This document shows, in pieces, positions 420 to 48,078 of a stretch of DNA of 64,000 bases. The notes below the pieces were generated by a model. It was not told where the DNA came from, searched no databases, and saw only the letters and a program-made list of their open reading frames with translations. The stretch lies in IMG/VR virus record IMGVR_UViG_3300009181_000033, positions 62,001-126,000 of that record. One strand, given 5' to 3'. Numbering within the stretch: position 1 is the stretch's first letter; each line of letters opens with the position of its first letter. Made by a program: the position numbers and the translations under genes.

Positions 420-455
420 AACCCTATCCTATCATGGTTCCTCAGGGTTTTGCAC
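420..455 (-). promoter_or_regulatory. leaderless phage promoter GTGCAA-N18-TAGGAT-N6-ATG
   Basis: One of about 35 copies with fixed spacing to the start codon. Confidence 0.7.
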
Positions 456-701
456 CGTTCCTAGAACAATATAGGTTCCATCGGTTACGTAAGAATAGTT
501 CTCACACCTTCTCATGGGAACTTCGTGTTTAAAAACCGTTCCAGGCCGGGAAGAATGAATCAATAGGATCTTTGAAACACCATCACCAGGAATTCCAGGA
601 AGTTCACCAACGATTGTATAAATTGTGTTTCTGGATTGGGATAGGATAACATCACCAACCTGTAATTCACTCTCCAGGGCAACGGAACCGATCTCCCTCA
701 C
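432..701 (-). CDS. hypothetical protein, KOW-like (LQVGDVI)
   Basis: ORF track; its C-terminus VQNPEEP is encoded by the next promoter. Confidence 0.6.
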   Translation of the reverse strand: MREIGSVALESELQVGDVILSQSRNTIYTIVGELPGIPGDGVSKILLIHSSRPGTVFKHEVPMRRCENYSYVTDGTYIVLGTVQNPEEP

Positions 702-703
702 CG

Positions 704-886
704 TTACCCCACAAGGTGTTTATCGTGGCGGAATTCTGTTAGGATCTCCCACAGGAGGGCCGGAAGTGAATCATGGATGTGAAGGTAACCTGGTATACCA
801 TCATACATGCAACACCAGGCCGGGCCAGGTGAAATAACTCCGGGCTTTTCTCTCCAAATCCTGAATGATTTCATTAGGTTAAACAT
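704..886 (-). CDS. hypothetical protein
   Basis: ORF packs tightly between its neighbours. Confidence 0.55.
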   Translation of the reverse strand: MFNLMKSFRIWREKPGVISPGPAWCCMYDGIPGYLHIHDSLPALLWEILTEFRHDKHLVG

Positions 887-1099
887 TCAACTACGAATTT
901 CTAGTTCAGCTTCGAGTTCGGTGATTTGCCTTTTTAATTCAGCAATTTGTAATCTAATCTGAGCGGTGGAAAGATTACTAAAATCTTTTGGTTTAGGTAA
1001 ACCAATCATTCTACTTTTTTCTTTCTTATCTTCGGTTAGTTGGGCTCGCTTAATTTCTTCTGTAATAATCTGCTTAAGTTGTGCTGCGGTGATTTTCAT
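887..1099 (-). CDS. putative virion protein with MKIT..QL..II.EE leader
   Basis: N-terminal motif shared with other ORFs; ATATTTA directly upstream. Confidence 0.65.
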   Translation of the reverse strand: MKITAAQLKQIITEEIKRAQLTEDKKEKSRMIGLPKPKDFSNLSTAQIRLQIAELKRQITELEAELEIRS

Positions 1100-1244
1100 G
1101 GTGATAAATATATCTCCTAATTAAAAATGTCAGTGAAGTTGAAAATATCATATACTGATGATTAGCAACGCGAGGTGTATCATAGGGATATTTATTTATT
1201 GTGAGTTAGAGAAAAGATACGGCCTTGTGCCGTATCATGAATCG

Positions 1245-1649
1245 TCATATTCTATCATGCTGAGTTTCAATGTATTTTTTCACACTTTCTTCGTTGGTTT
1301 CTCCAACAGATCCGTAGAAGGTTCCTCTACTCCACAAACCTGATCCCCAAAATTTTCTACCTTTTAGTTTTGGAAACTTAGTGAAGATATACACAGCTGA
1401 TATTGATTTCAACGTTTTTGCTATTTCTATCGGAGCTGTTTGATGATCCGCCTGAACAAAAATGTGAACATGATCTGGCATCACTTCAATGGTATGTAAT
1501 AGCCAACCATATTCTCCACAAGTTTCTGCAATGATATGTTTTGTCTCGACAGCAATATCATCTTTTAACACTGCATGTCGATATTTTGGGCACCAAACGA
1601 TGTGATAACCGAGTGAATGAACGCAATTATTTTCTGATATTTTTTGCAT
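1245..1649 (-). CDS. tnpA: IS200-type Y1 (HUH) transposase
   Basis: YHIVWCPKYR, DHVH (HUH), LWSRG, catalytic YIETQ; likely start MQKISENN. Confidence 0.95.
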   Translation of the reverse strand: MQKISENNCVHSLGYHIVWCPKYRHAVLKDDIAVETKHIIAETCGEYGWLLHTIEVMPDHVHIFVQADHQTAPIEIAKTLKSISAVYIFTKFPKLKGRKFWGSGLWSRGTFYGSVGETNEESVKKYIETQHDRI

Positions 1650-1668
1650 ATTGGTTATACTTATAAAC

Positions 1669-2832
1669 GTGAACAGGACGATCAAGGTAAAATTACAACT
1701 TTCTGATGCAGATGTTCTCTCGCTTAGAGAAACTCAGAAGATTGTTTCGTCCTGCTTCAACGATCACGTAGCTTGGTCATTTAAGAAGAAGTCTTGGTCG
1801 AAGTTAACTGCCCATAAAGATCTCTATTTCTCACAGAGAGAAAAATTCCCTCAACTTCCGTCTGCAATGTTGCAATCCACAAGAGATACAGCTCTTGAAT
1901 CTGTAAAAGCGTTAAAATTCAAGTTTCAGCCTAAGAAATCTGAAAACAGCGGGATTAGGTACGATAAGAGATTGTTCTCACTAAGAGGAGAACAACTTAC
2001 TTTGAGCTCTATAAACGGTAGAATTAAGACAATAGTTCAATTCCCTGAATGGTGTAAGGAAGTTGTAAAAAAGGGAAAGGTTCAAGGAATTCAACTTTGC
2101 TGGGACAAGAAAAAGAAACAGTTTAATGCGAGTATAGTCTTTAGCTTGTTCGATATTAAGCCTAAATCAGACGGAACAGTCATAGGCTTAGATAGAGGTT
2201 TGATCAACTTAGTGACGAGTTCAGAAGGTGAAATTTTTGGTGGGAAATCAGTCAGAAAGAATCAGAGGAAGTTCCTCTACTTGAGGAAGAAGTTGTCGAC
2301 AAAAGGTACTCATTCCGCTAAAAGGCTTCTTAGGAAGATTAGTGGAAAAGAGCAGCGGTTCAGTCGAGAAATTAATCACATCATTGCGAAAGAATTGTCT
2401 GAAAGAAGTGAAGTCAAAACGTATGTCATAGAGGATTTAAGCGGAATTAGAAACAAATCAAGAGGAAGAAAGATGAACAAGATTCTCTCCTCTTGGGCTT
2501 TTAAACAGTTTGAATCTTTCTTGACTTATAAGTGCACAGCAAAAGGAATATCTGTCGAAAAAGTTGATGCAAGATATACGTCACAAAGATGTTCTTGTTG
2601 CGGAACAATTAGAAAAGAAAATCGTTTGAGAGGAAGATACTCCTGTAATCGATGTAGTTTCACAAAACACGCAGACATTAATGCAGCAATTAATATCAGA
2701 GATCGTTGGATCTCTAAATCATCTCGCAGCTTGAACTGTGAGCAGGATGCAGTCAATCATCCACACGGAAACAGTGTTGTTCTTGACGTTGGATCAAGCG
2801 CTGAGTTCCAAGGTCACGGCCTCGTGCCGTGA
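1669..2832 (+). CDS. tnpB: RNA-guided endonuclease TnpB
   Basis: RuvC motifs GLDRG / IEDL / HADINAA, TSQRCSCCG zinc ribbon; GTG start at 1669 after ATACTTA. Confidence 0.95.
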   Translation: MNRTIKVKLQLSDADVLSLRETQKIVSSCFNDHVAWSFKKKSWSKLTAHKDLYFSQREKFPQLPSAMLQSTRDTALESVKALKFKFQPKKSENSGIRYDKRLFSLRGEQLTLSSINGRIKTIVQFPEWCKEVVKKGKVQGIQLCWDKKKKQFNASIVFSLFDIKPKSDGTVIGLDRGLINLVTSSEGEIFGGKSVRKNQRKFLYLRKKLSTKGTHSAKRLLRKISGKEQRFSREINHIIAKELSERSEVKTYVIEDLSGIRNKSRGRKMNKILSSWAFKQFESFLTYKCTAKGISVEKVDARYTSQRCSCCGTIRKENRLRGRYSCNRCSFTKHADINAAINIRDRWISKSSRSLNCEQDAVNHPHGNSVVLDVGSSAEFQGHGLVP

Positions 2833-2840
2833 CTATTTGA

Positions 2841-3109
2841 CCCTCCGCATTACATTTCGGGAAACTCCGTTCATCCGTTAATCCCTCGTGTTGGAAGAAG
2901 ATCTCTTCCGATTCCTTGAATAAGGAACGTAGATCCTCGTAGCCCAGCTCAATGGAATTGGTTCCACTTCCCCAAGGATCGGTGATTCCAATACTAAACC
3001 TCTTGTAGGTTGGATTCCAATGAATGCTTAGATGATTTCCTTCCATATCATGAAAACCAGCCGAGGTGTTCTTCTTCTTTTTTGCCGTGGTGTTCAACCC
3101 CTTCTTCAT
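2841..3109 (-). CDS. hypothetical protein whose stop was displaced by the IS insertion
   Basis: Promoter at 3110-3145; native end would be CNAEG-TAA at the empty site; now reads on into the IS to 2753. Confidence 0.6.
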
Positions 3110-3413
3110 GATTCTATTCTATCATCCTCCTGCGAAACTTTGCACCGGATCAACATCACTCATGAAAAGGTAGAATTCCTTAACACCTTCGTAATCCCAC
3201 ACACCAACTCGAATTCCAAACTGTTGAACCGCACTGATCCAGGAACCGTGAGGAGATCTTGAGTTCTGTGGGGAATCATAGGTAAATCCCCCGGCCGAGA
3301 TCCATTTTCCACCCTTTTCCACCCCACGAAATCCTCGGTTCTTACCGGATTTTATTGGTGGTTGAGATGAAATATTTCCGTGTGGATCACAGCCAAGTTC
3401 CTCAAGGTTCATG

Positions 3414-3815
3414 TTACGCGTTTTCCCATCCTCCAACCGGCCGATATCCGGAAGGATACTGGCAAACATAACCACGCCAACCATCGGCCTCGCATCCTTC
3501 CAAGGCATCCGAAAGATTGTTCCAGGTGGTTGGATTCCACGAGGCTATTTTTCCTGTTGGAGAACCATCAACAGTGTAGGCAATTCCGTACAACATTCGC
3601 CCATCCAATTCCTTGGTGTGCCTAACCCATTCCTGAAGTGCCCCAATTAGATTTTCTGCCTCCTTCCAACCTTCGGAGGAGGGAGGAAGAGAAAAAGAAG
3701 TACTTTCGTGATAATCAACAGTAACAATTCTCAGTGTTCCATCTACAATCATCTCCAGGAACAAATCACCGTGTTTTTCGGAATCAATTTCGCTTGTGTA
3801 TAGATCTGCACTCAT
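3414..3815 (-). CDS. hypothetical protein
   Basis: GTGCAA promoter at 3816-3851. Confidence 0.65.
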   Translation of the reverse strand: MSADLYTSEIDSEKHGDLFLEMIVDGTLRIVTVDYHESTSFSLPPSSEGWKEAENLIGALQEWVRHTKELDGRMLYGIAYTVDGSPTGKIASWNPTTWNNLSDALEGCEADGWRGYVCQYPSGYRPVGGWENA

Positions 3816-3851
3816 GTTTCTATTCTACCTCACTCAGGTATGGGTTTGCAC

Positions 3852-5433: not shown

Positions 5434-5606
5434 GAGATCACCTGGTAATAGTTAAGGAAGTATGCTTGTGCACCATGATTCACCTTGCCATTTGTGAATA
5501 AAACAACAAACCCGTATTCAGTTTCCTCAAGAATCACACCCATCTCCTCATCATGAAAAACCGAGGCATTTGTATAGATGGTATGAATCATATCACCGGT
5601 TTTCAT
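5430..5606 (-). CDS. MKPGD-family small protein, not in the ORF track
   Basis: MKTGDMI..., 58 aa, with its own GTGCAA promoter. Confidence 0.65.
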   Translation of the reverse strand: MKTGDMIHTIYTNASVFHDEEMGVILEETEYGFVVLFTNGKVNHGAQAYFLNYYQVIS

Positions 5607-5642
5607 GATTCACTCTACCATCCCTTTACGGAACTTTGCACC

Positions 5643-6248: not shown

Positions 6249-6508
6249 ACCAATTCCAGATCACATCTTTTTATCCAACCACAACCACCTAATGTAGGTA
6301 AAACCTTTACCCAAAATGTTTGGATGTGTTTTCCATCACCAGGAATTTCCTTTTGTTCCAATACAATTCCAACATCAATGTAACTGAATTTTCCTACGTG
6401 GCACTTCCTATAGATCGATTCAAAACTCGGCGGATCATCCCACAGCACCTTAAATGGTTCCTCACCCTCCAATTCAGGAATGATTCGTACCATATCACCG
6501 GGTTTCAT
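6245..6508 (-). CDS. MKPGD-family small protein
   Basis: MKPGDMVR...GIVLE...WVKV...GW; promoter at 6509-6544. Confidence 0.75.
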   Translation of the reverse strand: MKPGDMVRIIPELEGEEPFKVLWDDPPSFESIYRKCHVGKFSYIDVGIVLEQKEIPGDGKHIQTFWVKVLPTLGGCGWIKRCDLELV

Positions 6509-6517
6509 GATTCCAAT

Positions 6518-6787
6518 CTACCACATCCATTCCACGGTTTGCACATCTTCTTCTCGAATCCAACCAATTCCGGTGGGACAAGAAATCTTCAACCACCTCT
6601 CGTAGATCTCATCATCTTCATCCACGTAAACATCACATTCCAATACCAATCCAACATCCAAGTAGTGAAAATGGGTTGCAGGTGGAATAAGAATTCCAGC
6701 CTTTGTGTACAACACCAAGGTGGCAACATCAGGAAAGTTTGGATCCAAACTTTCCGCACGAATTCGTACGAGATATCCAGGGATCAC
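6518..6787 (-). CDS. MKPGD-family small protein
   Basis: MIPGYLVR...CPTGIGW; close paralogue of 8294-8563. Confidence 0.75.
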   Translation of the reverse strand: MIPGYLVRIRAESLDPNFPDVATLVLYTKAGILIPPATHFHYLDVGLVLECDVYVDEDDEIYERWLKISCPTGIGWIREEDVQTVEWMW

Positions 6788-6999: not shown

Positions 7000-7232
7000 G
7001 TGAGAACCTCTATATCATCCTCAATCTCTTCATCCTTCAACCAGGTTCTTCCAACCATTCTAACAGGGGAGGTGAGAAAAACATGGATCTCGTTGTACTT
7101 GGATCCTGGCTTCTTTGGGATGAAATCAATCACCATTCCAAACCAATCACCATAAACGTTATCAAAAACTTGATGACGATGGTAAAAATCAGGCGGAACA
7201 GGTTTGTTTCTAACCATATCACCAGGTTTCAT
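6996..7232 (-). CDS. MKPGD-family small protein
   Basis: MKPGDMVR; promoter upstream. Confidence 0.75.
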   Translation of the reverse strand: MKPGDMVRNKPVPPDFYHRHQVFDNVYGDWFGMVIDFIPKKPGSKYNEIHVFLTSPVRMVGRTWLKDEEIEDDIEVLT

Positions 7233-7250
7233 GGTTCTACCTTACCACAC

Positions 7251-7487
7251 TCACATGTGGGTTTGCATGGTTTGCCGGGTTGATTCCATACGATAAGCGG
7301 TTTGAGGTTCAACCACGATTAGGTCTGATTCCCTACAATGAACGATTCCTTGGGAAGGAAACAACACAGACCACCATGGAAACGGATCATAGGTTTTCGG
7401 TGTGTGACTCTCAAGCAAGAATCCATATTCAATGTCCAGATTCATTTCCCATCGAAACTTCCAACAGACAAGATCACCGGGGCTCAT
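7251..7487 (-). CDS. MKPGD-family small protein
   Basis: MSPGDLV. Confidence 0.7.
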   Translation of the reverse strand: MSPGDLVCWKFRWEMNLDIEYGFLLESHTPKTYDPFPWWSVLFPSQGIVHCRESDLIVVEPQTAYRMESTRQTMQTHM

Positions 7488-7746: not shown

Positions 7747-7994
7747 TTGCTTCCTCCTTTCAAGATTTCTTCTACGAGTAACTCAGGCTCACCCCATCTT
7801 TCGATCGAACGCCAAGGTAAAGAACCGAGCTCATTTCGCCGTAGCTGGCTCAAATCGTTGAGCTCAGTGATTCCGTAGATTTCAGCGTTCTCAATCTCTT
7901 CGTGGGCATATTTGAATCCAATTTTGCCAGCCTCGGACTCATCCTTCGCCTCTACGAGAATTTCTGTTTGAAATGTCACGCGATAAAGTTTCAT
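7743..7994 (-). CDS. hypothetical protein, paralogue of 10223-10489
   Basis: LYRxTFQTEILV...GSLPWR shared. Confidence 0.75.
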   Translation of the reverse strand: MKLYRVTFQTEILVEAKDESEAGKIGFKYAHEEIENAEIYGITELNDLSQLRRNELGSLPWRSIERWGEPELLVEEILKGGSK

Positions 7995-8251
7995 GGTAGC
8001 ACTTTATCATAGTTTGGACTGGGTTTGCACTCAATGGCTACATTTGCGATCCATAATGGTTGTCCATGCACCAGGATTCTCGTGAATTCTTCACGAATCT
8101 CTAGGATGACCCCTACGTCCTCGGAATAAACAATGACAGCCTTGTGATACCCATATTCCCCTGGATAGCTAGCGTATGCTTTTCTTCCAAGATCAAGGCC
8201 ATGCATCACGGCCCACCGTGGGATCGTAGAGACCATATCACCAGGTTTCAT
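7991..8251 (-). CDS. MKPGD-family small protein
   Basis: MKPGDMV; promoter at 8252-8287. Confidence 0.75.
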   Translation of the reverse strand: MKPGDMVSTIPRWAVMHGLDLGRKAYASYPGEYGYHKAVIVYSEDVGVILEIREEFTRILVHGQPLWIANVAIECKPSPNYDKVLP

Positions 8252-8293
8252 GGTTTTATCTTACCACACTCACGTGTGGGTTTGCACCGGGTT

Positions 8294-10222: not shown

Positions 10223-10489
10223 TCACGCAGAGTTTCTTTCTCTCAGGATTTCTTCAACAGTTAGTTCAGGTTCCTTTGCCAAATCACGTTGGATGTTTCT
10301 CCACGGCAAAGAACCACGTTCACCTCGAAGGAGTTGATCCTCTGCTGTGATCTCCTTGATGGAATACACGTTCGTATTTCCATTACCAATCTCCTCTTCT
10401 AGATTATTGTACCCAATTCGTTCTGCCTCACGTTCATCCGAGGCATCCACCAAGATCTCTGTTTGAAATGTCAGCCTATAAAGGGTCAT
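10223..10489 (-). CDS. hypothetical protein, paralogue of 7743-7994
   Basis: Promoter at 10490-10525. Confidence 0.75.
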   Translation of the reverse strand: MTLYRLTFQTEILVDASDEREAERIGYNNLEEEIGNGNTNVYSIKEITAEDQLLRGERGSLPWRNIQRDLAKEPELTVEEILRERNSA

Positions 10490-10513
10490 GTCACTACCTT
10501 AAACCACAAGGTA

Positions 10514-10798
10514 TCAGATTTGCACATCTACATTCATTACTGTTCCAGGAGAAATCAACTTAATCTCATCCTCTTCCTCCACGAAAATTTCTTTCACAAC
10601 ACCTTCACACAAAAGTTTTAAGGTTGAATATGAAGTTTCCCAACGCCCAAATGGATCTTGATTTTGACCTTCATCGTGATTCAATACCACACCCACAATC
10701 ACACCACATTCCATTCCTTCCCAAATCTTGGTAATCTTAATCAAATTACCCCTCATCAAACCTAAACACTGTGATCTAGACATACTTGAATCCCCCAA
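10514..10798 (-). CDS. MKPGD-like small protein (MRGNLI)
   Basis: Family-like pattern; start uncertain. Confidence 0.55.
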   Translation of the reverse strand: MGDSSMSRSQCLGLMRGNLIKITKIWEGMECGVIVGVVLNHDEGQNQDPFGRWETSYSTLKLLCEGVVKEIFVEEEDEIKLISPGTVMNVDVQI

Positions 10799-12234: not shown

Positions 12235-12431
12235 TCCACCAACTCCAGGTAATTTCGATGAAGTCTAACAATCATCTTGCCCGTGTCAGGGTGACCCACC
12301 CTCAACACCTGCAACATCTCCAGCTGGTATTTGGTGTACTTCTTCCCTTTGGTGGGTACGTACTCCGGACCAAGCACCACCCCAAGAATGTCGGGTGAAG
12401 TCTTGAATCGAACCAGGTTACCAGGCTTCAT
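12231..12431 (-). CDS. MKPGD-family small protein
   Basis: MKPGNLVRF; promoter at 12432-12467. Confidence 0.75.
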   Translation of the reverse strand: MKPGNLVRFKTSPDILGVVLGPEYVPTKGKKYTKYQLEMLQVLRVGHPDTGKMIVRLHRNYLELVE

Positions 12432-12588
12432 GATTCAAACTTACCACACTGAAATGGGGGTTTGCACCCGTGCCTAGATCTCCACATCATCTTATCTTTT
12501 GCGCGCCAAGTGAACAACCCGTGGAACCTTCCGATCTCCACGCACAACCTCTTGTTCCGACCCTCCATCGATCTCTTGGATGGGATGC

Positions 12589-31721: not shown

Positions 31722-31963
31722 GATCTTAATCTACCTTGAGGATTGTTGACTTTGCACTCAGTCGAGAGAGGCCTTCAGATTCGCGATGCCGATCTCGAAC
31801 GCCCGGATGTCGAGAGGATCCGTGGCGGTACGCAGGGACTCCGTCATGCTGTCGAGCAGCGTTCGACGGTATTCCACCGGCAGATTGGTGAGGTCGAGCT
31901 TCTTAACTTCGGATCGGTTGGCTTCCATGGTTCTACTCTATCAGGTTGAGGTGGAACTTTTCA

Positions 31964-34607: not shown

Positions 34608-34686
34608 AAATTACCCTTATCACTGAAGGTGCGGACTTTGCACCGGTGGTCAAAACAATTTCTTTCCCACAAGATCCTATTTAAAT

Positions 34687-36465: not shown

Positions 36466-36802
36466 TTCGATTTCCTCTCGGCGTTCCGGGTTACTCTCTT
36501 AACCTATCATGCCGGTTGCAGACCTTGCACCAGGCACCCAACTTTTTATTGAACCACGATAGAATACGCGGGTCGAGAGAGATTCATGGAGCACCTCACC
36601 CCGCTCTCATTGAAGACGACGTCGACGAACGAACAGGCCGAACCGCCTTCGTAGCCAGCGGCCGCAAGATCGTAGTCCTGCAAGTCGTAGACCATGCGAG
36701 TGTAGCAGTCGGACGTGGTCGTTGCAAGACGACCGTTCACCTTGAGGAGCGTTCCCTTGTTCATAGTTAAGTTGTACCTTGCTGGTTGCAGACCTTGCAC
36801 CA

Positions 36803-37237: not shown

Positions 37238-37434
37238 GTCTCCACCCTGGAATTGTTTTCGAAGGCCACCTGGAGAGAACAGGGCTCGAGGACGAAAGTG
37301 TCGTACCCACTTACCACGACGGCCATGCCTTCACGGGTGATATCAACCCATCGCCCAGTACGCCCCTCGGCCGTGATGACGTACGACCCCAACTGAGGGA
37401 TCTTCGACGTCTTTCTTCTCTCGTTCCAGTTCAC
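37234..37434 (-). CDS. hypothetical protein
   Basis: GTGCAA promoter 36 nt upstream. Confidence 0.65.
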   Translation of the reverse strand: MNWNERRKTSKIPQLGSYVITAEGRTGRWVDITREGMAVVVSGYDTFVLEPCSLQVAFENNSRVET

Positions 37435-37607
37435 TTTCTTAATCTACTCCGCCAACCGCCAAACTTGCACCAACCACAAAAAATATTTGAAGGCCTGAAA
37501 CAATACCCCCAAATCCCCGCACCCGCGACCGGTCGGAAACCATCCCCAGAAGAGCCCAGAATGCCCTCAGAATAGCTTTACTCCCAATGCCATAGGTTCT
37601 TTTGTCG

Positions 37608-37970: not shown

Positions 37971-37972
37971 TT

Positions 37973-39645: not shown

Positions 39646-39698
39646 GCTGTATGTTCTCCTGATTCGCTGTCAGTTGATAGTTTAGTTATGCTGCTTGC

Positions 39699-39929
39699 TC
39701 AGCCGACCTTGCACCCCTCAGCAAAAATTTTTTCAACCTCAATTTTGAGGAGCTTGTACGCAATACGCCAGTCACGATCCTTGGCAGTCGCAAGCTGCTG
39801 GTCGTTCACCGTCAAGGCTGTGACATAATACTTCCCAAGCCTTTCTCCCGTCACGATAGGCTTGAGAGACTTGCCAAAGAGCTCAGTAAACTTGAGCTCA
39901 ACCTGCTTCTTAGGGTTCGGCTTGAACAT
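39699..39929 (-). CDS. hypothetical protein
   Basis: Promoter upstream; C-terminus CKVG comes from the next promoter. Confidence 0.65.
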   Translation of the reverse strand: MFKPNPKKQVELKFTELFGKSLKPIVTGERLGKYYVTALTVNDQQLATAKDRDWRIAYKLLKIEVEKIFAEGCKVG

Positions 39930-40320
39930 GTTCTTATACTACCTCAGGAGCCTGCAGGTTTGCACCGGCAAGATAATTTTCCTTCTGTTTTTCACTGGCA
40001 ATGTCAAAGGATGGTCGGTCACAATTGGCACAGAGGAAGTCCCCTGCCTCGTCCACCGTGCCCACGTTCTTATCGGTACAGACAACACAATACTGGGTGC
40101 AGATCTTGTAATTCTTGTTCATTTCATCTTTCCAATTTCTTCTTTGAGCGCCTTATAAGACCAAAAGCAATACATCACCGTCAACACGAACCAAAACAGC
40201 AAAGCCATCTCGAGGAGAGCAGAGTTCCGAGATGCCCAGTACGTGTTCAGAACAGTGCTAAGGAATCCGTAAGAAAAAGACATGTAAATCACCGTCACAA
40301 TGAATAACGGCATGTTGTCT

Positions 40321-41662: not shown

Positions 41663-41709
41663 GTCGTTCGCTCCGAGTTATCGGGTGGCTCCATTGCCAC
41701 CTGATAGAA

Positions 41710-41985
41710 TTAGTATACCAAGCTGGTTGCCGACTTTGCACCGGCGATGTTCGTGCGGAAGCAGACGCGTCCGTTCTCGATAACATACTCCCATCCCATC
41801 AGCTGCGCAAAAGCATACGCCTCGCGGTGATCAATAGGACAGACAGGAGCATGGTCGAGGTGGTGGAAGTGGTTGCATGGGTTGTTGTCGTTGTCGAAGG
41901 CGTCCGGGCCCTCGACGATGAACGTGGTATCGAGCGGAGCATAGGTGGGGTTGTTGACGCTATCATCGAAGCAGACGTAGAGCAT
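41710..41985 (-). CDS. hypothetical protein
   Basis: RBS AAAGGA. Confidence 0.6.
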   Translation of the reverse strand: MLYVCFDDSVNNPTYAPLDTTFIVEGPDAFDNDNNPCNHFHHLDHAPVCPIDHREAYAFAQLMGWEYVIENGRVCFRTNIAGAKSATSLVY

Positions 41986-42017: not shown

Positions 42018-42299
42018 TCAGTCGTTGAAGATCTCGATGGAGATCCCATCAGTCGACTTGAACTGGAGGGAGATGACGTCTCCGTGCATCCGCCTAGGGC
42101 GGTCAAAGACGAATAGCTTCGAGACGCCGGTCTTGGATGATCGCACGTAGAATCCCTCGTCCAGGGAATCGTTGCTCACCTGTGCCACACGGAAATTCGG
42201 AATGGAGCTCATCTCGCACGTGCCGAGCTTGCCATCCCAGACGAAGAGACGGCCGTCATATACAGGAACTTGCTGCTTTCCGTTAACCTTCATATTCAT
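42018..42299 (-). CDS. hypothetical protein
   Basis: GTGCAAAGTCAAC promoter upstream. Confidence 0.7.
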   Translation of the reverse strand: MNMKVNGKQQVPVYDGRLFVWDGKLGTCEMSSIPNFRVAQVSNDSLDEGFYVRSSKTGVSKLFVFDRPRRMHGDVISLQFKSTDGISIEIFND

Positions 42300-42352
42300 G
42301 GTTATACCTCCCCCGTTGTTGACTTTGCACCTTCAAAGAGAATTTTCTTCAG

Positions 42353-42544: not shown

Positions 42545-42559
42545 GTCCAATTCCTTTCC

Positions 42560-42700
42560 ATAAATCAAAACTAACACTCGACAACGCGACATTGCACCAA
42601 AAAACAAGAAAAAAATTTCTTTGCGCAATATTGCGGTGCTTTTGAACAAATTTATTTTTGGTGTGCAAAGCGTGAACTGGGCGAGGTACAACAGGATAAT
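42560..42700. promoter_or_regulatory. back-to-back GTGCAA promoters with A/T-rich spacer: divergence point of the early-type block
   Basis: TTGCAC at ~42592 and GTGCAA at ~42663; coding strand switches here. Confidence 0.7.
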
Positions 42701-42702
42701 CG

Positions 42703-42942
42703 ATGGACTTCAACGATTTCCTGAAGGAAGCACTTGAACCTGACGTCAACCTGAGGCAGGGACAGAAGCTCATGATCAACCTTCACTCGGTTCGGAAAGA
42801 CCTATACGGGAAGCTCTTCAACGGCTCACTCGAAGGCAAGACTTTTTCGTGGGTGTTGTACGACTGTTTCTACGAAGACTAGAAGATGTGGGCGACAATT
42901 GAGTGGCTTGGAGAAAACTGGTGCAAAGTCGGCAACGAGTGA
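42703..42942 (+). pseudogene. small ORF with in-frame TAG at 42880
   Basis: MDFNDF...DCFYED*KMWATIEWLGENW reads on plausibly after the stop. Confidence 0.45.
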
Positions 42943-43313
42943 GGTGCAACTGAATCATGAACGAAGAAGTCAACGTGACGTTAACTGCTCGTGAGCTTGT
43001 CGACACGTATCGTGCCGTGCGATCCCTGATGGGTCACTCGTGTCGGACGAAGCTATCAGTAACTACTACGAGCGACTGGACAGAATTCACTCCAAACTGA
43101 TTGATGCAACTGTGCAAGTGGCTTCCAAGAACAAGGAGGATGGACAATGAGTAACACACGTAAGGTAACGAGACTTCTTATTGACATGATGGATAACGGC
43201 GTGCTTGATCCTAATAATCTGGCTCTGCTGTGTCTCGGTTACATGTCTGAAGATGACGTGGCTGATATGGCTCGCCTCAACGATCTTCTCGAGGAGGAGG
43301 AGGATGATGATGC

Positions 43314-44175: not shown

Positions 44176-44228
44176 AATAATCTCACCCGTCGGTGCAAAG
44201 TCAACTCCGAACAAGGTAATCTAGAACC

Positions 44229-44948
44229 ATGAAGACGAAGAAGAGCACCGACGAGCTGGAAAACGACGACTTCATCATCGAATCCCCCGCCGGAGAATCC
44301 TCCGACGACTGGGACACCGTCTCCGATAACGTTCCACGCTCCATGCTCGGAGCTCCTTCAAAGGATCGATCAGCCTCACGACCGGACATCTCCAAGCTCC
44401 CCAGCGGAATCGGACCTGACGGAATCCCAACCTTCGTGCGAGGTGACAAGGTCGTCATCGAACGATACTCCGGAGCACTCAAGGGTCACCCGTACCTCGA
44501 CACCCGTACCTACGTCATCCAGAACGTAGACACGGTCACCGGAAAGATCACCATGTACGACGCCGCCCAAGGCCAGTTCGCCACCGACAACTGGAAGGCC
44601 GGACTGCAGAACGGCAACGTCTACAAGCTAGCCAAGAATACCACCATCGATCTCTCCTCCAAGCGCAAGCGCGGTCGTCCCCGCAAGAACCCCGACGCTC
44701 CCACCAACGTCGCCAAGCCCCCTCCCGCCCTCGACGCCAACGGCATGCCCGTCGTCAAGAAGCGCGGCCGTCCCGCAGGCTCAAAGAACCGTCCCAAGGA
44801 AGTCATCATCAACGAAAAGCGGGCAAAGAAGGACGCACGATTCTTCAAGCGCTACGCCAAGCACCCTTCCTCCCACCAACAGAAGGCCGATCCCAAGTGG
44901 ATCTTCCTCCTCCCCATGGTCGACCTCCTCAAGGTCCTCACCAGGTAA
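44229..44948 (+). CDS. AT-hook (HMGA-like) DNA-binding protein
   Basis: Acidic N-terminus; KRKRGRPRK and KKRGRPAGSKNRPK; promoter at 44193-44228. Confidence 0.75.
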   Translation: MKTKKSTDELENDDFIIESPAGESSDDWDTVSDNVPRSMLGAPSKDRSASRPDISKLPSGIGPDGIPTFVRGDKVVIERYSGALKGHPYLDTRTYVIQNVDTVTGKITMYDAAQGQFATDNWKAGLQNGNVYKLAKNTTIDLSSKRKRGRPRKNPDAPTNVAKPPPALDANGMPVVKKRGRPAGSKNRPKEVIINEKRAKKDARFFKRYAKHPSSHQQKADPKWIFLLPMVDLLKVLTR

Positions 44949-44951
44949 CCC

Positions 44952-45227: not shown

Positions 45228-45439
45228 GGAGGTTCGAGGCGGGCGACTTGATCACCCTGAAATATGCGTACGCTTACTCCCCATCATCGATCGCACCCGC
45301 AATCGTACTCGAGGTCATTCGAGGTGGATACAAGGTGCTCTTCCCAAACGGCGTCTACGAACTCAGCTCAGACTACGCCCACGAATCATGCCAACTTCTT
45401 CAAGATTTCGGTGCAAAGTCAACATTCGCTGAAGTATAA
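45224..45439 (+). CDS. MKPGD-like small protein
   Basis: FEAGDLI...IVLE...YKVLFPNG. Confidence 0.65.
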   Translation: MRRFEAGDLITLKYAYAYSPSSIAPAIVLEVIRGGYKVLFPNGVYELSSDYAHESCQLLQDFGAKSTFAEV

Positions 45440-45473
45440 CTGAATTGAAGGTGAGGAAAGGAAGGGCAAGAAC

Positions 45474-45773: not shown

Positions 45774-46039
45774 GAAAATCTGACGGACAGTGAAAAGCTC
45801 AACATCAAAAGGAGTATAACAGGATCATGAACGAATTCAGTCACGCGGAACTGCGGCTCATCCTCGAAGGCCTTGATGTCGTCCGTGAACGGATGCGGGA
45901 AGATATCAGTGTCAACCTCAACCTCGGCGAGGAAGAGTACAACCAGGTGGTCAGGCTCCAAGACAAGATCATCGAGGCCCTGGAATCTCGCTGCTTCTAC
46001 TGAGTATAAAGTCAACACCCTCTGGAGTATAACTGAATC

Positions 46040-46408
46040 ATGAAGGGCATGAAGAAGGTTGTCACCCTCCCAGCCGGAACCAAATACCACTGGAATCGCT
46101 CACCAGAAGAAGTAAAAGATATCTACAGTCGACTCCCTCCACTCGATGACGCCGGCGAACCCACCATCGTCAACTCCACAGGCACCTCCCACCTCAATGA
46201 ACCAACGATAGTCACCATCACCAAAACACGTAAGATCGACTGGCACTCCTGGTTCAATAAACCCAAATTCCTCGTCGAAGGGCTAACCACCATCAACGGA
46301 AACCCAAAAATCATCATGTTCTCCCTACCCCCCAACGAGTTCTTCCGCCTCGAGGAAGAGGAAGTCATCGTTAACGCCTCGCGAGTCCGCCGGCCCGTGG
46401 CACGCTGA
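46040..46408 (+). CDS. hypothetical protein, paralogue of 46808-47167
   Basis: PAGT.Y, D.AGEP, WFNKP, TING.P shared. Confidence 0.75.
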   Translation: MKGMKKVVTLPAGTKYHWNRSPEEVKDIYSRLPPLDDAGEPTIVNSTGTSHLNEPTIVTITKTRKIDWHSWFNKPKFLVEGLTTINGNPKIIMFSLPPNEFFRLEEEEVIVNASRVRRPVAR

Positions 46409-46417
46409 ACTTCGCCA

Positions 46418-46453
46418 GTGCAAAGTCAACATCAAAAGGAGTATAATAGAATC
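46418..46453 (+). promoter_or_regulatory. consensus leaderless promoter GTGCAA-N18-TATAAT-N6-ATG
   Basis: Perfect -10 box; near-identical copies at ~45790 and 47135. Confidence 0.8.
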
Positions 46454-46618
46454 ATGGTCAGCAAGGATAAGCAGGCACAGGTTGCTCAGGACGCTCTCTA
46501 CGAGATTGGTTGGGAGATGACTCCTGCCGAGGCTCGTGAGCAGCTCGATTTCTTCGCGAAGATGAGCATTGATATTTGGCTTCAATCTGGTCAGACGGAC
46601 CAATTTGCTTGGGAGTGA
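46454..46618 (+). CDS. hypothetical protein
   Basis: Start reassigned to MVSKDK. Confidence 0.6.
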   Translation: MVSKDKQAQVAQDALYEIGWEMTPAEAREQLDFFAKMSIDIWLQSGQTDQFAWE

Positions 46619-46767
46619 TCATGACATTATACGATGTTGTTTATACTAATTCGTTGGGAATTCGCCAGCTCACCGTTGTATCTTCTTTGGTGATTAAAGA
46701 GACGATTGCTCTTTATTCTCGTGAAGGTGGAGTGATTTTTTCGATCAAGCAGCGGACATAACCGCTT

Positions 46768-46809
46768 GGGACTGTAGCACAATGGCAGTGCAGCTGGCTT
46801 TTAACCAGT
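46768..46809 (+). pseudogene. tRNA-Lys(TTT) 5' half without T arm
   Basis: GGGACTGTAGCACAATGGCAGTGCAGCTGGCTTTTAACCAGT followed by coding sequence. Confidence 0.8.
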
Positions 46810-47167
46810 GGCTCAACGGCTACGACCTGTGAAAGCAAGGGAGACGATCGTCATTCCGGCGGGCACCACGTACTACTACACCCGCACCAAGGAAGAGTGC
46901 GAAGACATCCGCCAACGTGACATCGCAACCGGCAACAACTACGACTCGGCAGGCGAACCAAAAATCTACAGCCGAATCACATCCAGCCGAATCCAAGAAA
47001 ACACCTTCTGCACGATCATCAAGAACCGCAACATCGAGTGGGACACTTGGTTCAATAAGCCATCCCACCTCCTCGAGGTGCTAGCAACGATAAACGGCGC
47101 ACCAAGAATTATTTTAGTCAAAGACCCACGCCGGGTGCAAAGTCAACATCAAAAGGAGTTTAACTAA
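46808..47167 (+). CDS. hypothetical protein, paralogue of 46040-46408
   Basis: Shared motifs. Confidence 0.7.
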   Translation: MAQRLRPVKARETIVIPAGTTYYYTRTKEECEDIRQRDIATGNNYDSAGEPKIYSRITSSRIQENTFCTIIKNRNIEWDTWFNKPSHLLEVLATINGAPRIILVKDPRRVQSQHQKEFN

Positions 47168-47170
47168 ACT

Positions 47171-47668
47171 ATGAACGCTGAACAACTCAAGGAGATTCTC
47201 CACCACCATGCCCTCTGGATCCTCAACCCCGAAGAGGGTTGCAGAGCGAATCTGAGTGGAGCGAATCTGAGCGGAGCGAATCTGTTCAGGGCGAATCTGA
47301 GCGAAGCGTTTCTGTGCGAAGCGTTTCTGTGGGGAGCGTATCTGAACGGAGCGTATCTGAACGGAGCTGATCTGAGTGGAGCGGATCTGAGCAGAGCGAA
47401 TCTGTGGGAAGCGAATCTGTTCAGGGCGTATCTGTGGGAAGCGAATCTGAGTGGAGCGAATCTGAGCGGAGCGAATCTGAGCAGAGCGAATCTGAGTGGA
47501 GCGAATCTGAGTGGAGCCGATCTGCGCGGAGCCGATCTGCTGGATGCAAAGTTCACAGTGGAACTGAAGGACGCAAGAAATCTTCACGCCGTTGTTTACC
47601 ATCCACAACAATTGCCATTTTTGGCACTGAACCCTAGTTTCCTGGAATCTGTGCAAAGTTCCACCTGA
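47171..47668 (+). CDS. pentapeptide repeat protein
   Basis: About 21 A(N/D/Y/F)LXX units encoded by a 15-bp tandem repeat. Confidence 0.95.
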   Translation: MNAEQLKEILHHHALWILNPEEGCRANLSGANLSGANLFRANLSEAFLCEAFLWGAYLNGAYLNGADLSGADLSRANLWEANLFRAYLWEANLSGANLSGANLSRANLSGANLSGADLRGADLLDAKFTVELKDARNLHAVVYHPQQLPFLALNPSFLESVQSST

Positions 47669-47686
47669 AAGAGGTATAACTAAACC

Positions 47687-47884
47687 ATGAACAACGACAC
47701 GATCCGAGGTCTCTCCCCCTACGCCGACTTTAAACACGCTGATCTCGTCCGAAGCTCGCGATTGGCGGCGATCGTCAATTCAGCCGCTTCCAAGGGCCAC
47801 AAGGTCCGTCACGACATTGCCGAGGCTTTGGCCATGGAGCTCGAGTACCTCGCTCTTAACTTCGACCTGGTGCCGAAGAAGTGA
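47687..47884 (+). CDS. hypothetical protein, paralogue of 48079-48267
   Basis: LEYL.LNFDLVPKK shared; promoter at 47651. Confidence 0.7.
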   Translation: MNNDTIRGLSPYADFKHADLVRSSRLAAIVNSAASKGHKVRHDIAEALAMELEYLALNFDLVPKK

Positions 47885-48078
47885 CTCGAACGGTGCAAAG
47901 TTCGCCTGAGAAAGGATATACTAGGACCATGGAACAAGATTGGGAACAAGACCTGCAGTACCTTCCCGACCCCAATGAACACGCCAAGGAATGCTGGGAG
48001 TGGTTCAGGGACGCGATCGAGACACTCGACGTCACAGAAGCGGTGCAAAGTTCAACCGAGAAGTGATAGGATAGAACC

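What the first reader, a model, noticed from the sequence alone, without database searches (positions are those of the whole stretch)
420..48078. ~35 leaderless promoters that act as cassette boundaries and supply stop codons
Seen: GTGCAA begins exactly 36 nt before the start codon at 455, 3145, 3851, 6544, 8030, 8287, 10525, 12467, 42921, 44193, 46418, 47135, 47651, 47893 and 48043, with further copies between 30 and 43 kb. Each has an 18-nt spacer and a TANNN(T/C) box 6 nt before the ATG, leaving no room for an RBS. Upstream ORFs often run into the motif and end inside it (VQNPEEP*, VQTVEWMW*, VQSST*, VQSQHQKEFN*, CKVG*, AKSTFAEV*). Inference: these are sigma70-like promoters with an unusual -35 box that produce leaderless mRNAs. 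They also appear to be recombination joints for one-gene cassettes, like the promoter-bounded modules of T-even phages.
Basis: partly seen in the sequence, partly recalled or inferred. Interest (0 to 1): 0.75.

Follow-up and report, generated by a model that had tools for sequence, protein, structure and literature searches.

The report
Leaderless promoter array in jumbo phage
About 36 copies of one promoter-like motif (GTGCAAA, 18 bases, TAnnnT, 6 bases, ATG) sit in front of small genes of a 298-kb freshwater phage and its relatives, so these genes are probably transcribed from their own start codon without a ribosome-binding leader; this has not been shown by RNA data.

Summary
The window is bases 62001-126000 of a 297,894-bp freshwater jumbo phage with terminal repeats. 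GTGCAA is followed by ATG at exactly +36 in 30 of 175 genomic copies, against about 3 at other offsets. A matrix that ignores the ATG finds about 44 sites where 0.3-5 are expected. About 36 lie in the window, always in the direction of the gene. Of these, 27 have ATG and 1 has GTG exactly 6 nt after TAnnnT. Five have a 27-43 nt leader with a Shine-Dalgarno sequence, and one precedes a tRNA array.

The architecture is shared by a clade of related viral contigs: 348 sites, 85% with ATG at +36. Orthologous genes keep it while the spacers diverge. The best reading is a promoter class with an unusual -35 box that gives leaderless mRNAs. No RNA run was listed, so transcription starts are untested.

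The cassette idea is partly supported. Homology between promoters stops at the motif, downstream genes are unrelated, and most strain breakpoints fall on motifs. Recombination at the motif is not proven, and stem-loops are absent. A second motif, ATA(C/T/G)TTA, is also placed for leaderless starts. The phage also appears to have a split sigma factor.

The parts
417..455 (-). class-I promoter GTGCAAA-N17-TAGGAT-N6-ATG; 61-aa ORF to 234
3107..3145 (-). class-I promoter, ATG at +36; 118-aa ORF to 2753
3813..3851 (-). class-I promoter, ATG at +36; 133-aa ORF to 3414
5603..5641 (-). class-I promoter, ATG one base early (+35); 58-aa ORF
6506..6544 (-). class-I promoter, ATG at +36; 87-aa ORF; upstream ORF ends on the TAG of the -10 box
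7230..7268 (-). class-I promoter, variant ATGCAAA, ATG at +36; 78-aa ORF
7992..8030 (-). class-I promoter, ATG at +36; 83-aa ORF
8249..8287 (-). class-I promoter, ATG at +36; 86-aa ORF
10487..10525 (-). class-I promoter, ATG at +36; 88-aa ORF
12429..12467 (-). class-I promoter, ATG at +36; 66-aa ORF
26984..27022 (-). class-I-like promoter (GTGTAAA, TAAGTT) with no ATG; its predicted start lies 26 nt before the tRNA-Ser/Glu/Lys/Gly array
30544..30581 (-). class-I promoter, 17-nt spacer, leadered (gene start about 61 nt from the motif start)
31719..31757 (-). class-I promoter, ATG at +36; 85-aa ORF
31926..31964 (-). class-I promoter, variant GTGAAAA, ATG at +36; 56-aa ORF; homology to relatives starts at its first base
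32150..32188 (-). weaker class-I site, GTGAAAA/TACAAA, ATG at +36; 62-aa ORF
32533..32571 (-). class-I promoter, ATG at +36; 116-aa ORF; spacer identical to that of site 45411
32722..32760 (-). class-I promoter, ATG at +36; 50-aa ORF
34605..34643 (-). class-I promoter of the DUF2201 metallopeptidase-like gene (438 aa); leaderless in all relatives examined
36492..36530 (-). class-I promoter with a 29-nt leader and GAGG, for the KaiC-like ATPase gene; leadered in all relatives examined
36762..36800 (-). class-I promoter, ATG at +36; 72-aa ORF
37432..37470 (-). class-I promoter with GTG at +36; 66-aa ORF
39676..39714 (-). class-I promoter (CATAAC box) with a 33-nt leader and AGGAG, for the AAA_5 ATPase gene; leadered in the relatives
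39927..39965 (-). class-I promoter, ATG at +36; 76-aa ORF
41703..41741 (-). class-I promoter with a 43-nt leader and GGAG; 256-aa gene
42292..42330 (-). class-I promoter, ATG at +31 and +37; 91-93-aa ORF
42559..42597 (-). class-I promoter, left member of the divergent pair. The ATG at +36 opens only 6 codons; the real start is probably 15-20 nt further on
42663..42701 (+). class-I promoter, right member of the divergent pair; ATG at +40 (4-nt leader); 59-aa ORF
42921..42959 (+). class-I promoter (TGCAAC box), ATG at +36; 47-aa ORF
44193..44231 (+). class-I promoter, ATG at +36; 239-aa AT-hook protein
45411..45449 (+). class-I promoter with a 27-nt purine-rich leader; 99-aa gene; strain homology ends at 45420 and 45441
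45790..45829 (+). class-I promoter, GTGAAAA with a 19-nt spacer, ATG 6 nt after the box; 58-aa ORF
46004..46042 (+). class-I promoter, variant GTATAAA, ATG at +36; 122-aa ORF; one strain has a 385-nt insertion just upstream
46418..46456 (+). class-I promoter, TATAAT box, ATG at +36; 54-aa ORF; spacer identical to that of 47135
47135..47173 (+). class-I promoter, ATG at +36; 165-aa pentapeptide-repeat protein; upstream ORF ends at TAA inside it
47651..47689 (+). class-I promoter, ATG at +36; 65-aa ORF (paralogue of the 48079 gene)
47893..47931 (+). class-I promoter, ATG at +36; 45-aa ORF
48043..48081 (+). class-I promoter, ATG at +36; 62-aa ORF; homology to two relatives starts at its first base

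Best explanation
The motif is one class of phage promoter ('class I'). It is used for the many small pre-replicative genes of a clade of freshwater jumbo phages.

Anatomy, with +1 as the A of ATG:
- (G)GTGCAAA(G/C)(T/C)C at -37 to -27
- a spacer of fixed length (18 nt after GTGCAA, 17 after TGCAAA)
- G at -14, often as TGn
- TAnnn(T/C) at -12 to -7
- an A-rich 6-nt stretch ending in C or T
- ATG

RNA polymerase holoenzyme would open the -10 box and start on the A of the start codon. The mRNA would then have no 5' leader and no Shine-Dalgarno sequence, and would be translated by ribosomes that recognise the 5'-terminal AUG.

Nearly every small gene has its own copy, and there are no terminators between them. 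Transcripts should therefore be nested, with each gene translated mainly from its own transcript. A minority of the same promoters (for the KaiC-like ATPase, the AAA_5 ATPase and others) carry a normal 27-43 nt leader with a Shine-Dalgarno sequence. One copy drives a tRNA array.

The promoter fills the whole intergenic space. Its TGA/TAG/TAA triplets therefore end whatever frame runs into it. Promoter plus gene behaves as the unit that is gained, lost or moved between relatives.

Shown: the motif, its statistics, its placement, its conservation, and the modular pattern. Inferred: promoter activity, the start site, the reading factor, and recombination at the motif.

Which factor reads GTGCAAA is open. 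It could be the unknown host's primary sigma. It could also be the phage's own two-piece sigma. The phage sigma stops after region 4.1. A separate 92-aa zinc-ribbon protein carries region 4.2, with two changes in the recognition helix.
For: - Offset spike: 30 ATG at +36 against about 3 at other offsets.
- 43 sites against 0.3 expected, scored without the ATG. Spacer of 18 nt in 43 of 53 sites, and ATG 6 nt after the box in 31.
- -1 is C/T in 28 of 30, +1 is A, and G at -14 in 21 of 30.
- A divergent pair 66 nt apart at 42597/42663.
- The same motif occurs with Shine-Dalgarno leaders and before tRNA-Ser.
- 31 ATG to 1 GTG at these sites, against 74% ATG genome-wide in my own rough gene calls.
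- Public gene calls of the same genome (JGI and Logan records) pick the same ATGs.
- Relatives: 11 sites against 0 control in a 42-kb contig; 33, 19 and 32 sites against 0 control in three large contigs; 348 sites in 42 loci, 295 with ATG at +36.
- The ligase and DUF2201 orthologues keep boxes, spacing and N-terminus while the spacers differ. The KaiC-like and AAA_5 orthologues keep the leadered form.
- A second, unrelated motif ATA(C/T/G)TTA is also placed so that a start 5 nt after it falls on the ATG (14 at +12 against about 2.5). Leaderless design thus recurs with a different promoter.
- Canonical TTGACA-N17-TATAAT sites are not enriched (24 against 22.4).
- Modularity.
Against: - No transcript data: no RNA run was listed for this phage.
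- The host is unknown, so its ability to translate leaderless mRNA is unknown.
- The -35 box matches TTGACA in only 3 of 6 positions. No organism with such a consensus is known to me.
- The composite motif is not enriched in 156 Myxococcota genomes, the phylum with the nearest cellular homologues of the phage's MlaC-like gene.
- A purine-rich GGAG/GAGG/AAGG sits 12-13 nt before many of these ATGs. It could act as a distant Shine-Dalgarno sequence on read-through transcripts.
- The sigma gene itself lies downstream of a class-I site. That is awkward if class I needs that sigma.
Confidence: 0.66

Rival explanations
1. The motif is a promoter, but the messages are not truly leaderless. Most translation would come from read-through transcripts. 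In these, the G-rich element just 5' of the -10 box acts as a long-spaced Shine-Dalgarno sequence, or ribosomes that terminate in the motif re-initiate at the ATG 3-20 nt further on.
For: - GGAG/GAGG/AAGG lies 12-13 nt before the ATG in about two thirds of the sites in 34-49 kb.
- There are no terminators between the genes.
- In 13 of 30 sites the upstream frame stops inside the motif, and in 9 more just before it.
Against: - Genuine Shine-Dalgarno genes here have spacings of 7-10 nt.
- The G at -14 fits an extended -10 box.
- The near-exclusive ATG and the C/T at -1 fit a start site, not a ribosome site.
- The first promoters of each arm (42597/42663) have no upstream transcript to read through.
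Confidence: 0.12
2. The motif acts at the RNA level or as a binding site, not as a promoter. It could be a processing or cleavage site or a translational operator placed 36 nt before start codons. It could also be an operator for a phage repressor.
For: - The upstream half (GTGCAAAGTC, often followed by TTC-N6-GAA-like or CAAC spacer families) is longer and more invariant than a usual -35 box.
- The spacers fall into families.
Against: - The downstream half is a textbook extended -10 box at the textbook distance.
- No conserved secondary structure: mean z of -0.1 to -0.2.
- The motif occurs where no upstream transcript can exist (the divergent pair), before tRNAs, and at variable distance from ATG when a Shine-Dalgarno leader follows.
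Confidence: 0.07
3. The repeats are above all recombination or mobility sites, the ends of a mobile one-gene element. Any promoter activity would be secondary.
For: - Breakpoints between strains and relatives fall on the motif.
- Identical 31-nt promoter copies lie before unrelated genes.
- Gene units sit at different places in relatives.
Against: - No inverted repeats, target duplications or associated recombinase at the units.
- The two IS200/IS605 elements in the window are separate entities with their own ends.
- The strict phase with the ATG, and the retention of the motif before conserved core genes (ligase, DUF2201) across the clade, fit expression signals.
Confidence: 0.06

Closest known systems
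PeSL (promoter-early stem-loop) regulatory cassettes of T4-type phages RB49 and phi1 (Arbiol et al. 2010, PMC2839356)
   Same: About 50 repeated early-promoter elements per genome, concentrated in regions full of small genes without known homologues. They usually sit directly before such a gene and contain the stop codon of the upstream gene. Insertions, deletions and replacements between close relatives are associated with them.
   Different: PeSLs match the E. coli sigma70 consensus, carry a stem-loop terminator, end with a Shine-Dalgarno sequence and span about 100 bp. Here the -35 box is GTGCAAA. Stem-loops and terminators are not enriched. There is no Shine-Dalgarno sequence, the element is 39 bp long, and the phage has a DnaE-type polymerase with no T4 kinship. 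Mini-circles were not looked for.
Leaderless genes with the -10 box next to the ORF: Deinococcus-Thermus bacteria (PMC12340547) and the middle and late genes of Thermus phage phiYS40 (Sevostyanova et al. 2007, known to me from memory and cited; the paper is not held)
   Same: TAnnnT (often TGnTA) a few bases before the start codon, transcription starting at or next to it, and no Shine-Dalgarno sequence. A phage can use this for dozens of genes.
   Different: As I recall them, those promoters have no conserved -35 element and depend on the -10 box. Here a highly conserved upstream box at a fixed 18 nt is the strongest part of the motif. The genes look early rather than middle or late. The host is a freshwater organism of unknown phylum. 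The phage MlaC-like gene suggests a Gram-negative (two-membrane) host: in the control genomes that family was found only in E. coli and Caulobacter, and the nearest homologues found in genomes are from Myxococcota.
T4 middle promoters (MotA box at -30 plus a sigma70 -10 box; from my own knowledge)
   Same: A phage-specific conserved box replaces the host -35 element, while a host-type TAnnnT -10 box is kept. There are tens of copies before early and middle genes.
   Different: The box sequence and spacing differ (TGCTTtA centred at -30, against GTGCAAA at -36 to -30). T4 middle transcripts have leaders. MotA/AsiA homologues were not searched for. Here the candidate reader is a free-standing sigma region 4.2 protein.
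Extended -10 TGnTA motif of leaderless mRNAs in Bradyrhizobium japonicum (PMC4842269), and the absence of leaderless transcripts in jumbo phage phiKZ (PMC8244752)
   Same: Leaderless transcripts in a Gram-negative bacterium are associated with an extended -10 motif, as at many sites here.
   Different: That is a host-wide minority class without a special -35 box. In the phiKZ study, which mapped transcript starts early in infection, no leaderless transcript was found, so the design here is not a general jumbo-phage trait.

Membership tests
sigma70-type -35/-10 promoter | -10 hexamer TAnnnT | tested here: met
   T 28/30, A 26/30 and T/C 28/30 at the three defining positions; G at -14 in 21/30
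sigma70-type -35/-10 promoter | Two boxes separated by 17 +/- 1 bp | tested here: met
   18 nt after GTGCAA (17 after TGCAAA) in 43 of 53 sites
sigma70-type -35/-10 promoter | -35 hexamer resembling TTGACA | tested here: not met
   GTGCAA or TGCAAA matches 3 of 6 positions; canonical TTGACA-N16-18-TATAAT sites are not enriched, 24 against 22.4
sigma70-type -35/-10 promoter | Transcription starts 6-8 nt after the -10 box | not testable with these tools
   No RNA run was listed for this sequence
Leaderless mRNA gene (-10 box adjacent to ORF) | -10 box 5-8 nt before the start codon, with no Shine-Dalgarno sequence between | tested here: met
   6 nt in 31 sites; the 6 nt are A-rich and end in C/T
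Leaderless mRNA gene (-10 box adjacent to ORF) | Strong preference for AUG as start codon | tested here: met
   31 ATG to 1 GTG at these sites, against 74% ATG in my rough genome-wide gene calls
Leaderless mRNA gene (-10 box adjacent to ORF) | Primary 5' end on the start codon | not testable with these tools
   No RNA run listed
Leaderless mRNA gene (-10 box adjacent to ORF) | No usable ribosome-binding sequence upstream on longer transcripts | tested here: inconclusive
   GGAG/GAGG/AAGG lies 12-13 nt before the ATG at many sites
PeSL cassettes of T4-type phages | Stem-loop acting as terminator within the element | tested here: not met
   Terminator-like sites 19 against 18 expected; folding z of -0.1 to -0.2 for the motif and its upstream 45 nt
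PeSL cassettes of T4-type phages | Shine-Dalgarno sequence and start codon at the 3' end of the element | tested here: not met
   The ATG follows the -10 box after 6 nt
PeSL cassettes of T4-type phages | Concentrated in variable regions, directly before small genes of unknown function | tested here: met
   Sites lie before ORFs of 45-240 aa that mostly have no Pfam match and no paralogues
PeSL cassettes of T4-type phages | Insertions, deletions and replacements between close relatives bounded by the elements | tested here: inconclusive
   7 of 9 robust breakpoints lie on motifs, and one 385-nt insertion lies next to a motif. HSPs start at motifs. But short contigs, motif-only cross-matches and the lack of other intergenic DNA confound the test
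PeSL cassettes of T4-type phages | Host phage of the T4 superfamily | tested here: not met
   DnaE-type polymerase, at most 30% identity to any cultured phage, and a sigma70-family sigma
T4 middle (MotA-dependent) promoters | MotA box (a/t)(a/t)(a/t)TGCTTtA centred at -30 | tested here: not met
   The conserved box is GTGCAAA(G/C)(T/C)C at -36 to -27
T4 middle (MotA-dependent) promoters | MotA and AsiA homologues encoded | not tested
   No search was made; a free-standing sigma region 4.2 protein was found instead

The most novel reading that the evidence does not exclude
This phage clade runs its whole gene-expression programme on leaderless mRNAs, using its own two-piece sigma factor.

The truncated sigma (regions 1.2 to 4.1) would read the -10-only class II motif ATA(C/T/G)TTA. 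Together with the separately encoded zinc-ribbon region-4.2 protein, it would read GTGCAAA at class I promoters. The recognition helix of that small protein reads TRMRICQIE instead of TRERIRQIE. The small protein might be brought in with the virion.

Translation of each small gene would then be tied to firing of its own promoter. The 39-bp promoter would double as the homology patch that lets one-gene units move between genomes.
Probability: 0.2. Interest if true: 0.85.

Novelty: new variant of a known kind. Interest (0 to 1): 0.62.

Why it matters
If transcription really starts on these ATGs, this phage clade makes leaderless translation the rule for dozens of genes per genome, from two different promoter types. 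Its host is probably not one of the phyla known for leaderless mRNAs.

It would give three things:
- a compact 39-bp element that carries promoter, start site, start codon and upstream stop codon together;
- a sequence rule for correcting gene starts in these genomes, because ORF finders often pick the GTG of the -35 box;
- a second, independent case, after the T4-type PeSLs, of promoters marking the units of gene shuffling in phage genomes.

The unusual -35 box, together with a sigma factor that seems split inside region 4, also offers a direct test of how -35 specificity can be re-assigned.

Tried and rejected
- Transcript evidence: no RNA run was listed, so transcription starts could not be checked.
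- Near-identical DNA in cultured phages: none. The polymerase has at most 30% identity to any cultured phage.
- Host identification:
  - The first TnpB has no close relative in species genomes. Its named distant hits are cyanobacterial at only 44-46% identity, and cluster look-ups gave no organism names.
  - HIP1 and palindrome avoidance are uninformative.
  - The nearest homologues of the MlaC-like gene found in genomes, using one conserved peptide pattern, are from Myxococcota at 31-40% identity. The composite motif is at control level in 5 such genomes and in 151 further Myxococcota genomes. No host is claimed.
- Tandem duplication as the source of the repeats: rejected. Only one paralogous pair is found among 32 downstream proteins.
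- Initiator tRNA: the two phage tRNA-Met genes have a paired 1:72 end and lack the GGG/CCC anticodon stem, so they are not initiator-like.
- Canonical sigma70 promoters and intrinsic terminators: neither is enriched.
- Stem-loops in or before the motif: none.
- Complex prediction of the truncated sigma with the region-4.2 protein: weak support only. Score 0.53 against a best control of 0.00. That mark was reached by 51 of 78 solved complexes and 2 of 108 mismatched pairs, but passes at or under 0.60 are more often wrong than right unless the pairing was already likely. The pass may also reflect memory of the intact sigma-4 fold.
- Matrix hits at 34736(+), 39254(-) and 45909(+) were dropped as chance. 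They lie inside ORFs and have no proper -10 box.

Full report
WHAT THE WINDOW IS. The window is bases 62001-126000 of a 297,894-bp virus record with direct terminal repeats, rated complete. It was assembled from freshwater metagenomes. The phage encodes a tail sheath, a DnaE-type DNA polymerase, an SbcCD-like nuclease, 11 tRNAs in the window, and two IS200/IS605-type elements. No cultured phage is close: there is no DNA match, and the polymerase has at most 30% identity to any cultured phage.

THE OBSERVATION.
- Sites up to 42597 are on the minus strand and sites from 42663 on are on the plus strand. The array therefore forms two arms that diverge from a 66-nt gap.
- In the whole genome, 175 GTGCAA copies give 30 ATG at offset +36, against 1-8 at any other offset.
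- A weight matrix over -1 to +35, which does not see the ATG, finds 43 sites at a score where Markov shuffles give 0.3.
- With the two halves scored separately and the spacer left free, 44 sites reach a score where 5 are expected. The spacer is 18 nt in 43 of 53 sites, and ATG lies exactly 6 nt after the -10-like box in 31.
- Variants of the first box (GTGAAA, ATGCAA, GTATAA, GTGTAA) found by the matrix also have the ATG in place.
- The consensus is (G)GTGCAAA(G/C)(T/C)C, then a variable stretch, G-n-G-(G/A), TAnnn(T/C), an A-rich stretch ending in C or T, then ATG.

WHY A PROMOTER, AND WHY LEADERLESS.
- The downstream half is a standard -10 hexamer, frequently with the TGn extension.
- The two halves are at promoter distance.
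- The base before the ATG is a pyrimidine in 28 of 30 sites and the next base is the A of ATG. That is the usual start-site pair, and it sits 7 nt after the hexamer.
- The motif always points the same way as the gene behind it.
- At the strand switch, two copies stand back to back with T-rich DNA between them. No upstream transcript could feed them.
- The same motif also occurs with a 27-43 nt leader that carries GAGG, AGGAG or GGAG at normal distance (sites 30581, 36530, 39714, 41741, 45411).
- A GTGTAAA variant lies 26 nt before the tRNA-Ser gene that heads a four-tRNA array.

These last cases show that the motif does not need an ATG. This argues for a DNA-level transcription signal rather than a translation signal. 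Start codons at the exact position are ATG 31 times and GTG once, against 74% ATG in my rough genome-wide gene calls. Leaderless messages are expected to prefer AUG in this way. In 20 of 30 sites the TAG or TAA that opens the -10 box is in frame with the ATG, so the ORF cannot start further upstream. Public gene calls of the same genome (JGI and Logan records) pick the same ATGs. No RNA run holding this sequence was listed, so the start site itself remains an inference.

CONSERVATION.
- A relative with 54% protein identity in the DUF2201 gene has 7 exact sites and 4 one-mismatch sites in 42 kb, against none for the reversed control.
- A pattern scan of the viral collection found many freshwater contigs with several copies.
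- In 42 loci the matrix finds 348 sites, of which 295 (85%) have ATG at +36.
- Three large contigs hold 33, 19 and 32 exact sites, against 0 in controls.
- The DNA ligase and DUF2201 genes of distant relatives (phage sigma 69-71% identical to this phage's sigma) keep GTGCAAA, TAnnnT, the spacing and the ATG, while the spacer sequences differ completely. Their proteins begin at the same residues.
- The KaiC-like ATPase and AAA_5 ATPase genes have the leadered form here and in every relative examined.
- The leaderless or leadered state is therefore a conserved property of each gene.

A SECOND PROMOTER CLASS SUPPORTS THE READING.
- Upstream regions elsewhere in the genome are enriched in ATA(C/T/G)TTA: ATACTTA occurs in 13 of 134 upstream regions against 0.43 expected.
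- 41 intergenic copies lie between 33 and 256 kb, including before the sheath gene. There is no -35 box, only A/T-rich DNA.
- ATG follows at +12 in 14 copies (background about 2.5) and at +15 in 8. A start 5 nt after the motif would again fall on the ATG.
- In the window these sites coincide with ORF starts at 1099, 29703, 51372 and 58439 (+12) and at 29014 (+15).
- Two unrelated motifs, each at its own proper distance from the start codon, are hard to explain except by transcription starting on the ATG.
- Canonical TTGACA-N17-TATAAT sites are at chance level (24 against 22.4) and lie inside genes.

WHO READS THE MOTIF. This is open.
- The phage encodes a 270-aa sigma70-family protein at 41.7-42.5 kb of the genome. 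It aligns with primary sigmas from region 1.2 to region 4.1 and ends about 20 residues after RLRFGL, so it lacks the region 4.2 helix-turn-helix. The truncation is conserved in relatives.
- A separate 92-aa protein at about 286.9 kb has four conserved cysteines and matches exactly the missing part of the region 4 profile, positions 21-49.
- Its helix-turn-helix, IGKIYGLTRMRICQIEKNI, is identical in two orthologues that are only 45% identical overall. It differs from the primary-sigma sequence TRERIRQIE at two positions. From my own knowledge, residues of this helix contact -35 bases.
- Both genes were found together in this phage and in the two large relatives that carry either. Neither was found in the third large related contig, which is rated 65% complete.
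- A complex prediction gave weak support only: 0.53 against a best control of 0.00. That mark was reached by 51 of 78 solved complexes and 2 of 108 mismatches, but scores at or under 0.60 are weak. The interface covers sigma residues 221-270.

The simplest model is that the host primary sigma reads class I and the truncated phage sigma reads the -10-only class II. The alternative is that the two phage pieces together read GTGCAAA. That alternative fits the odd -35 box. It also fits the absence of the composite motif from the bacterial genomes I could test. It would, however, need the factor to be present before the sigma gene, which lies behind a class-I site, is transcribed.

STOP CODONS. The claim is correct, and it follows from tight packing. 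In 13 of 30 sites an open frame of at least 60 codons runs into the motif and ends there, and in 9 more it ends within 30 nt before it. The motif offers stops mainly in the frame of the ATG (26 of 30 sites: TGA at +21, TAG/TAA at +24, TAA at +30) and in frame 2 (21 of 30), but rarely in frame 1 (8 of 30). This matches the frames of the ORFs that end inside it: 9, 3 and 1.

CASSETTES.
- Pairs of promoters share up to 100% of the 18-nt spacer while the 60 nt on either side are at random identity (32571 with 45411; 46418 with 47135).
- Among 32 proteins encoded directly behind the promoters there is only one paralogous pair. The repeats are therefore not left over from gene duplication.
- In relatives, the conserved core genes are separated by different sets of small promoter-plus-gene units. 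Some of these have homologues elsewhere in this genome, even on the other arm.
- Of 16 DNA matches between relatives and this genome that cover a gene behind a class-I site, 14 begin at or after the first base of the motif, 5 of them within 3 nt of it. None crosses into the upstream gene by more than 15 nt.
- Contigs of four other freshwater runs were laid on 42300-48200. The robust ends of near-identical homology are at 45420, 45441, 45824, 45992/46000, 46417, 47148 and 48043, all within motifs that cover about 8.5% of the stretch. Two others, at 45132 and 46804-46809, are not. One strain has 385 extra letters just before the 46004 promoter and a further copy of that promoter before the 45827 gene.

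Caveats: the contigs are short, many laid pieces are motif-only cross-matches, and the intergenic DNA here is almost all promoter. Selection for intact genes would therefore give the same picture as crossing-over within the motif.

COMPARISON WITH WHAT IS KNOWN.
- The PeSL cassettes of T4-type phages are the nearest precedent for promoters as shuffling units (PMC2839356). But they have consensus sigma70 boxes, a stem-loop terminator and a Shine-Dalgarno sequence. Here stem-loops and terminators are at chance level.
- The -10 box next to the ORF is established in Deinococcus-Thermus (PMC12340547). A paper that cites the phiYS40 work calls that phage's genes leaderless and notes a TGnTA-like promoter motif. 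From memory, those are the middle and late genes and their promoters lack a conserved -35 element.
- Leaderless transcripts with a TGnTA motif exist in Bradyrhizobium.
- None was found in the early-infection transcript-start map of jumbo phage phiKZ.
- A full-text search for GTGCAA with 'promoter' and 'phage' found nothing relevant.

I therefore file this as a new variant of known kinds: a leaderless promoter array with a novel, strongly conserved upstream box, shared by a clade of uncultured freshwater jumbo phages.

VERDICT.
- Observation: confirmed.
- Promoter identity: likely, about 0.85.
- Start on the ATG: likely but unmeasured. Together with promoter identity, about 0.66.
- Promoter-plus-gene as the unit of exchange: probable.
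- The motif as the actual crossover site: possible, about one in three.

Noticed in passing
window 1099-1111(-), 29014-29029(-), 29703-29715(-), 51372-51387(-), 58439-58451(-), 15109-15130(+); genome-wide 33-256 kb: A second promoter-like motif, ATA(C/T/G)TTA, has no -35 box. There are 41 intergenic copies, and ATG follows at +12 (14 copies) or +15 (8 copies). It lies before the sheath gene and many large genes. It is probably the late class, and it is also placed for leaderless starts.
   Followed up: partly
outside the window: genome 41.66-42.47 kb (L009:1060-1872, minus) and about 286.83-287.11 kb (L010:1327-1605, plus): The phage sigma70-family protein stops after region 4.1. A separate 92-aa protein with four conserved cysteines carries region 4.2, with recognition helix TRMRICQIE. 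Both are conserved, and both were found in the two large relatives that carry either. Complex prediction gave weak support only (0.53 against a best control of 0.00). This may be a sigma factor split inside region 4.
   Followed up: partly
window 31964-32188(-), 46418-46618(+), 47881-48066(+); also L038: ORF finders take the GTG of the -35 box, or another upstream codon, as the start when the -10 box has no in-frame stop. This adds about 12 false codons. Gene starts in this clade could be corrected with the motif.
   Followed up: partly
window 1245-2832 and 12597-13688: An IS200/IS605-type element lies between class-I sites 455 and 3145. It has a Y1 transposase-like ORF at 1245-1685(-) and a TnpB at 1651-2832(+). 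A second TnpB at 12597-13688(-) has a class-II motif 9 nt before its ATG. A relative has a 92% identical copy of the second one (L078).
   Followed up: partly
window 23049-23609(-): A MlaC-like lipid-binding protein gene sits in the phage. Using one conserved peptide pattern, the nearest homologues found in genomes are from Myxococcota (Polyangia) metagenome-assembled genomes, at 31-40% identity. This is a weak host hint. The promoter motif is not enriched in 156 genomes of that phylum.
   Followed up: partly
window 58597-61269(+): An 890-aa protein has a short match (residues 253-277) to the rifampin ADP-ribosyltransferase (Arr) family. It might be an enzyme that modifies host RNA polymerase. 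This is not examined further.
   Followed up: no
window 19239-22400(-) and 51424-54633(+): Two large paralogous proteins (1053 and 1069 aa) with a beta-propeller and Laminin_G_3 domains lie on opposite strands. They are probably receptor-binding or fibre proteins. Short DNA repeats between the two regions show up in relatives (L075).
   Followed up: no
window 47651-48081 and relatives G002-G004: The 'variable' spacers fall into families, for example AGTTC-N6-GAAAGG and AGTCAACC-N-GAAC. In relatives these recur every 200-250 nt in arrays of tiny genes at contig ends. The spacer may hold a second binding site, for example for shut-off of early transcription.
   Followed up: no
window 5430-5606, 6245-6508, 6996-7232, 7991-8251, 12231-12431 (all minus): Five small proteins behind class-I promoters start with MKPGDMV or MKTGDMI but show no other detectable similarity. 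Two others start with MKLYRVTFQTEIL or MTLYRLTFQTEIL. They may be very diverged families.
   Followed up: no
window 30000-50000 against the rest: G+C is 49-56% in the promoter-dense 30-50 kb stretch, against 40-47% in 0-24 kb of the window and 36-45% in most of the genome. The -10 boxes follow suit: TATAAC/TACAAC in the G+C-rich part, TAGAAT/TAAGGT in the other.
   Followed up: no
outside the window: genome 184571-188485(-): The DnaE-type polymerase gene has a Hint-domain match at residues 475-512, which suggests an intein.
   Followed up: no
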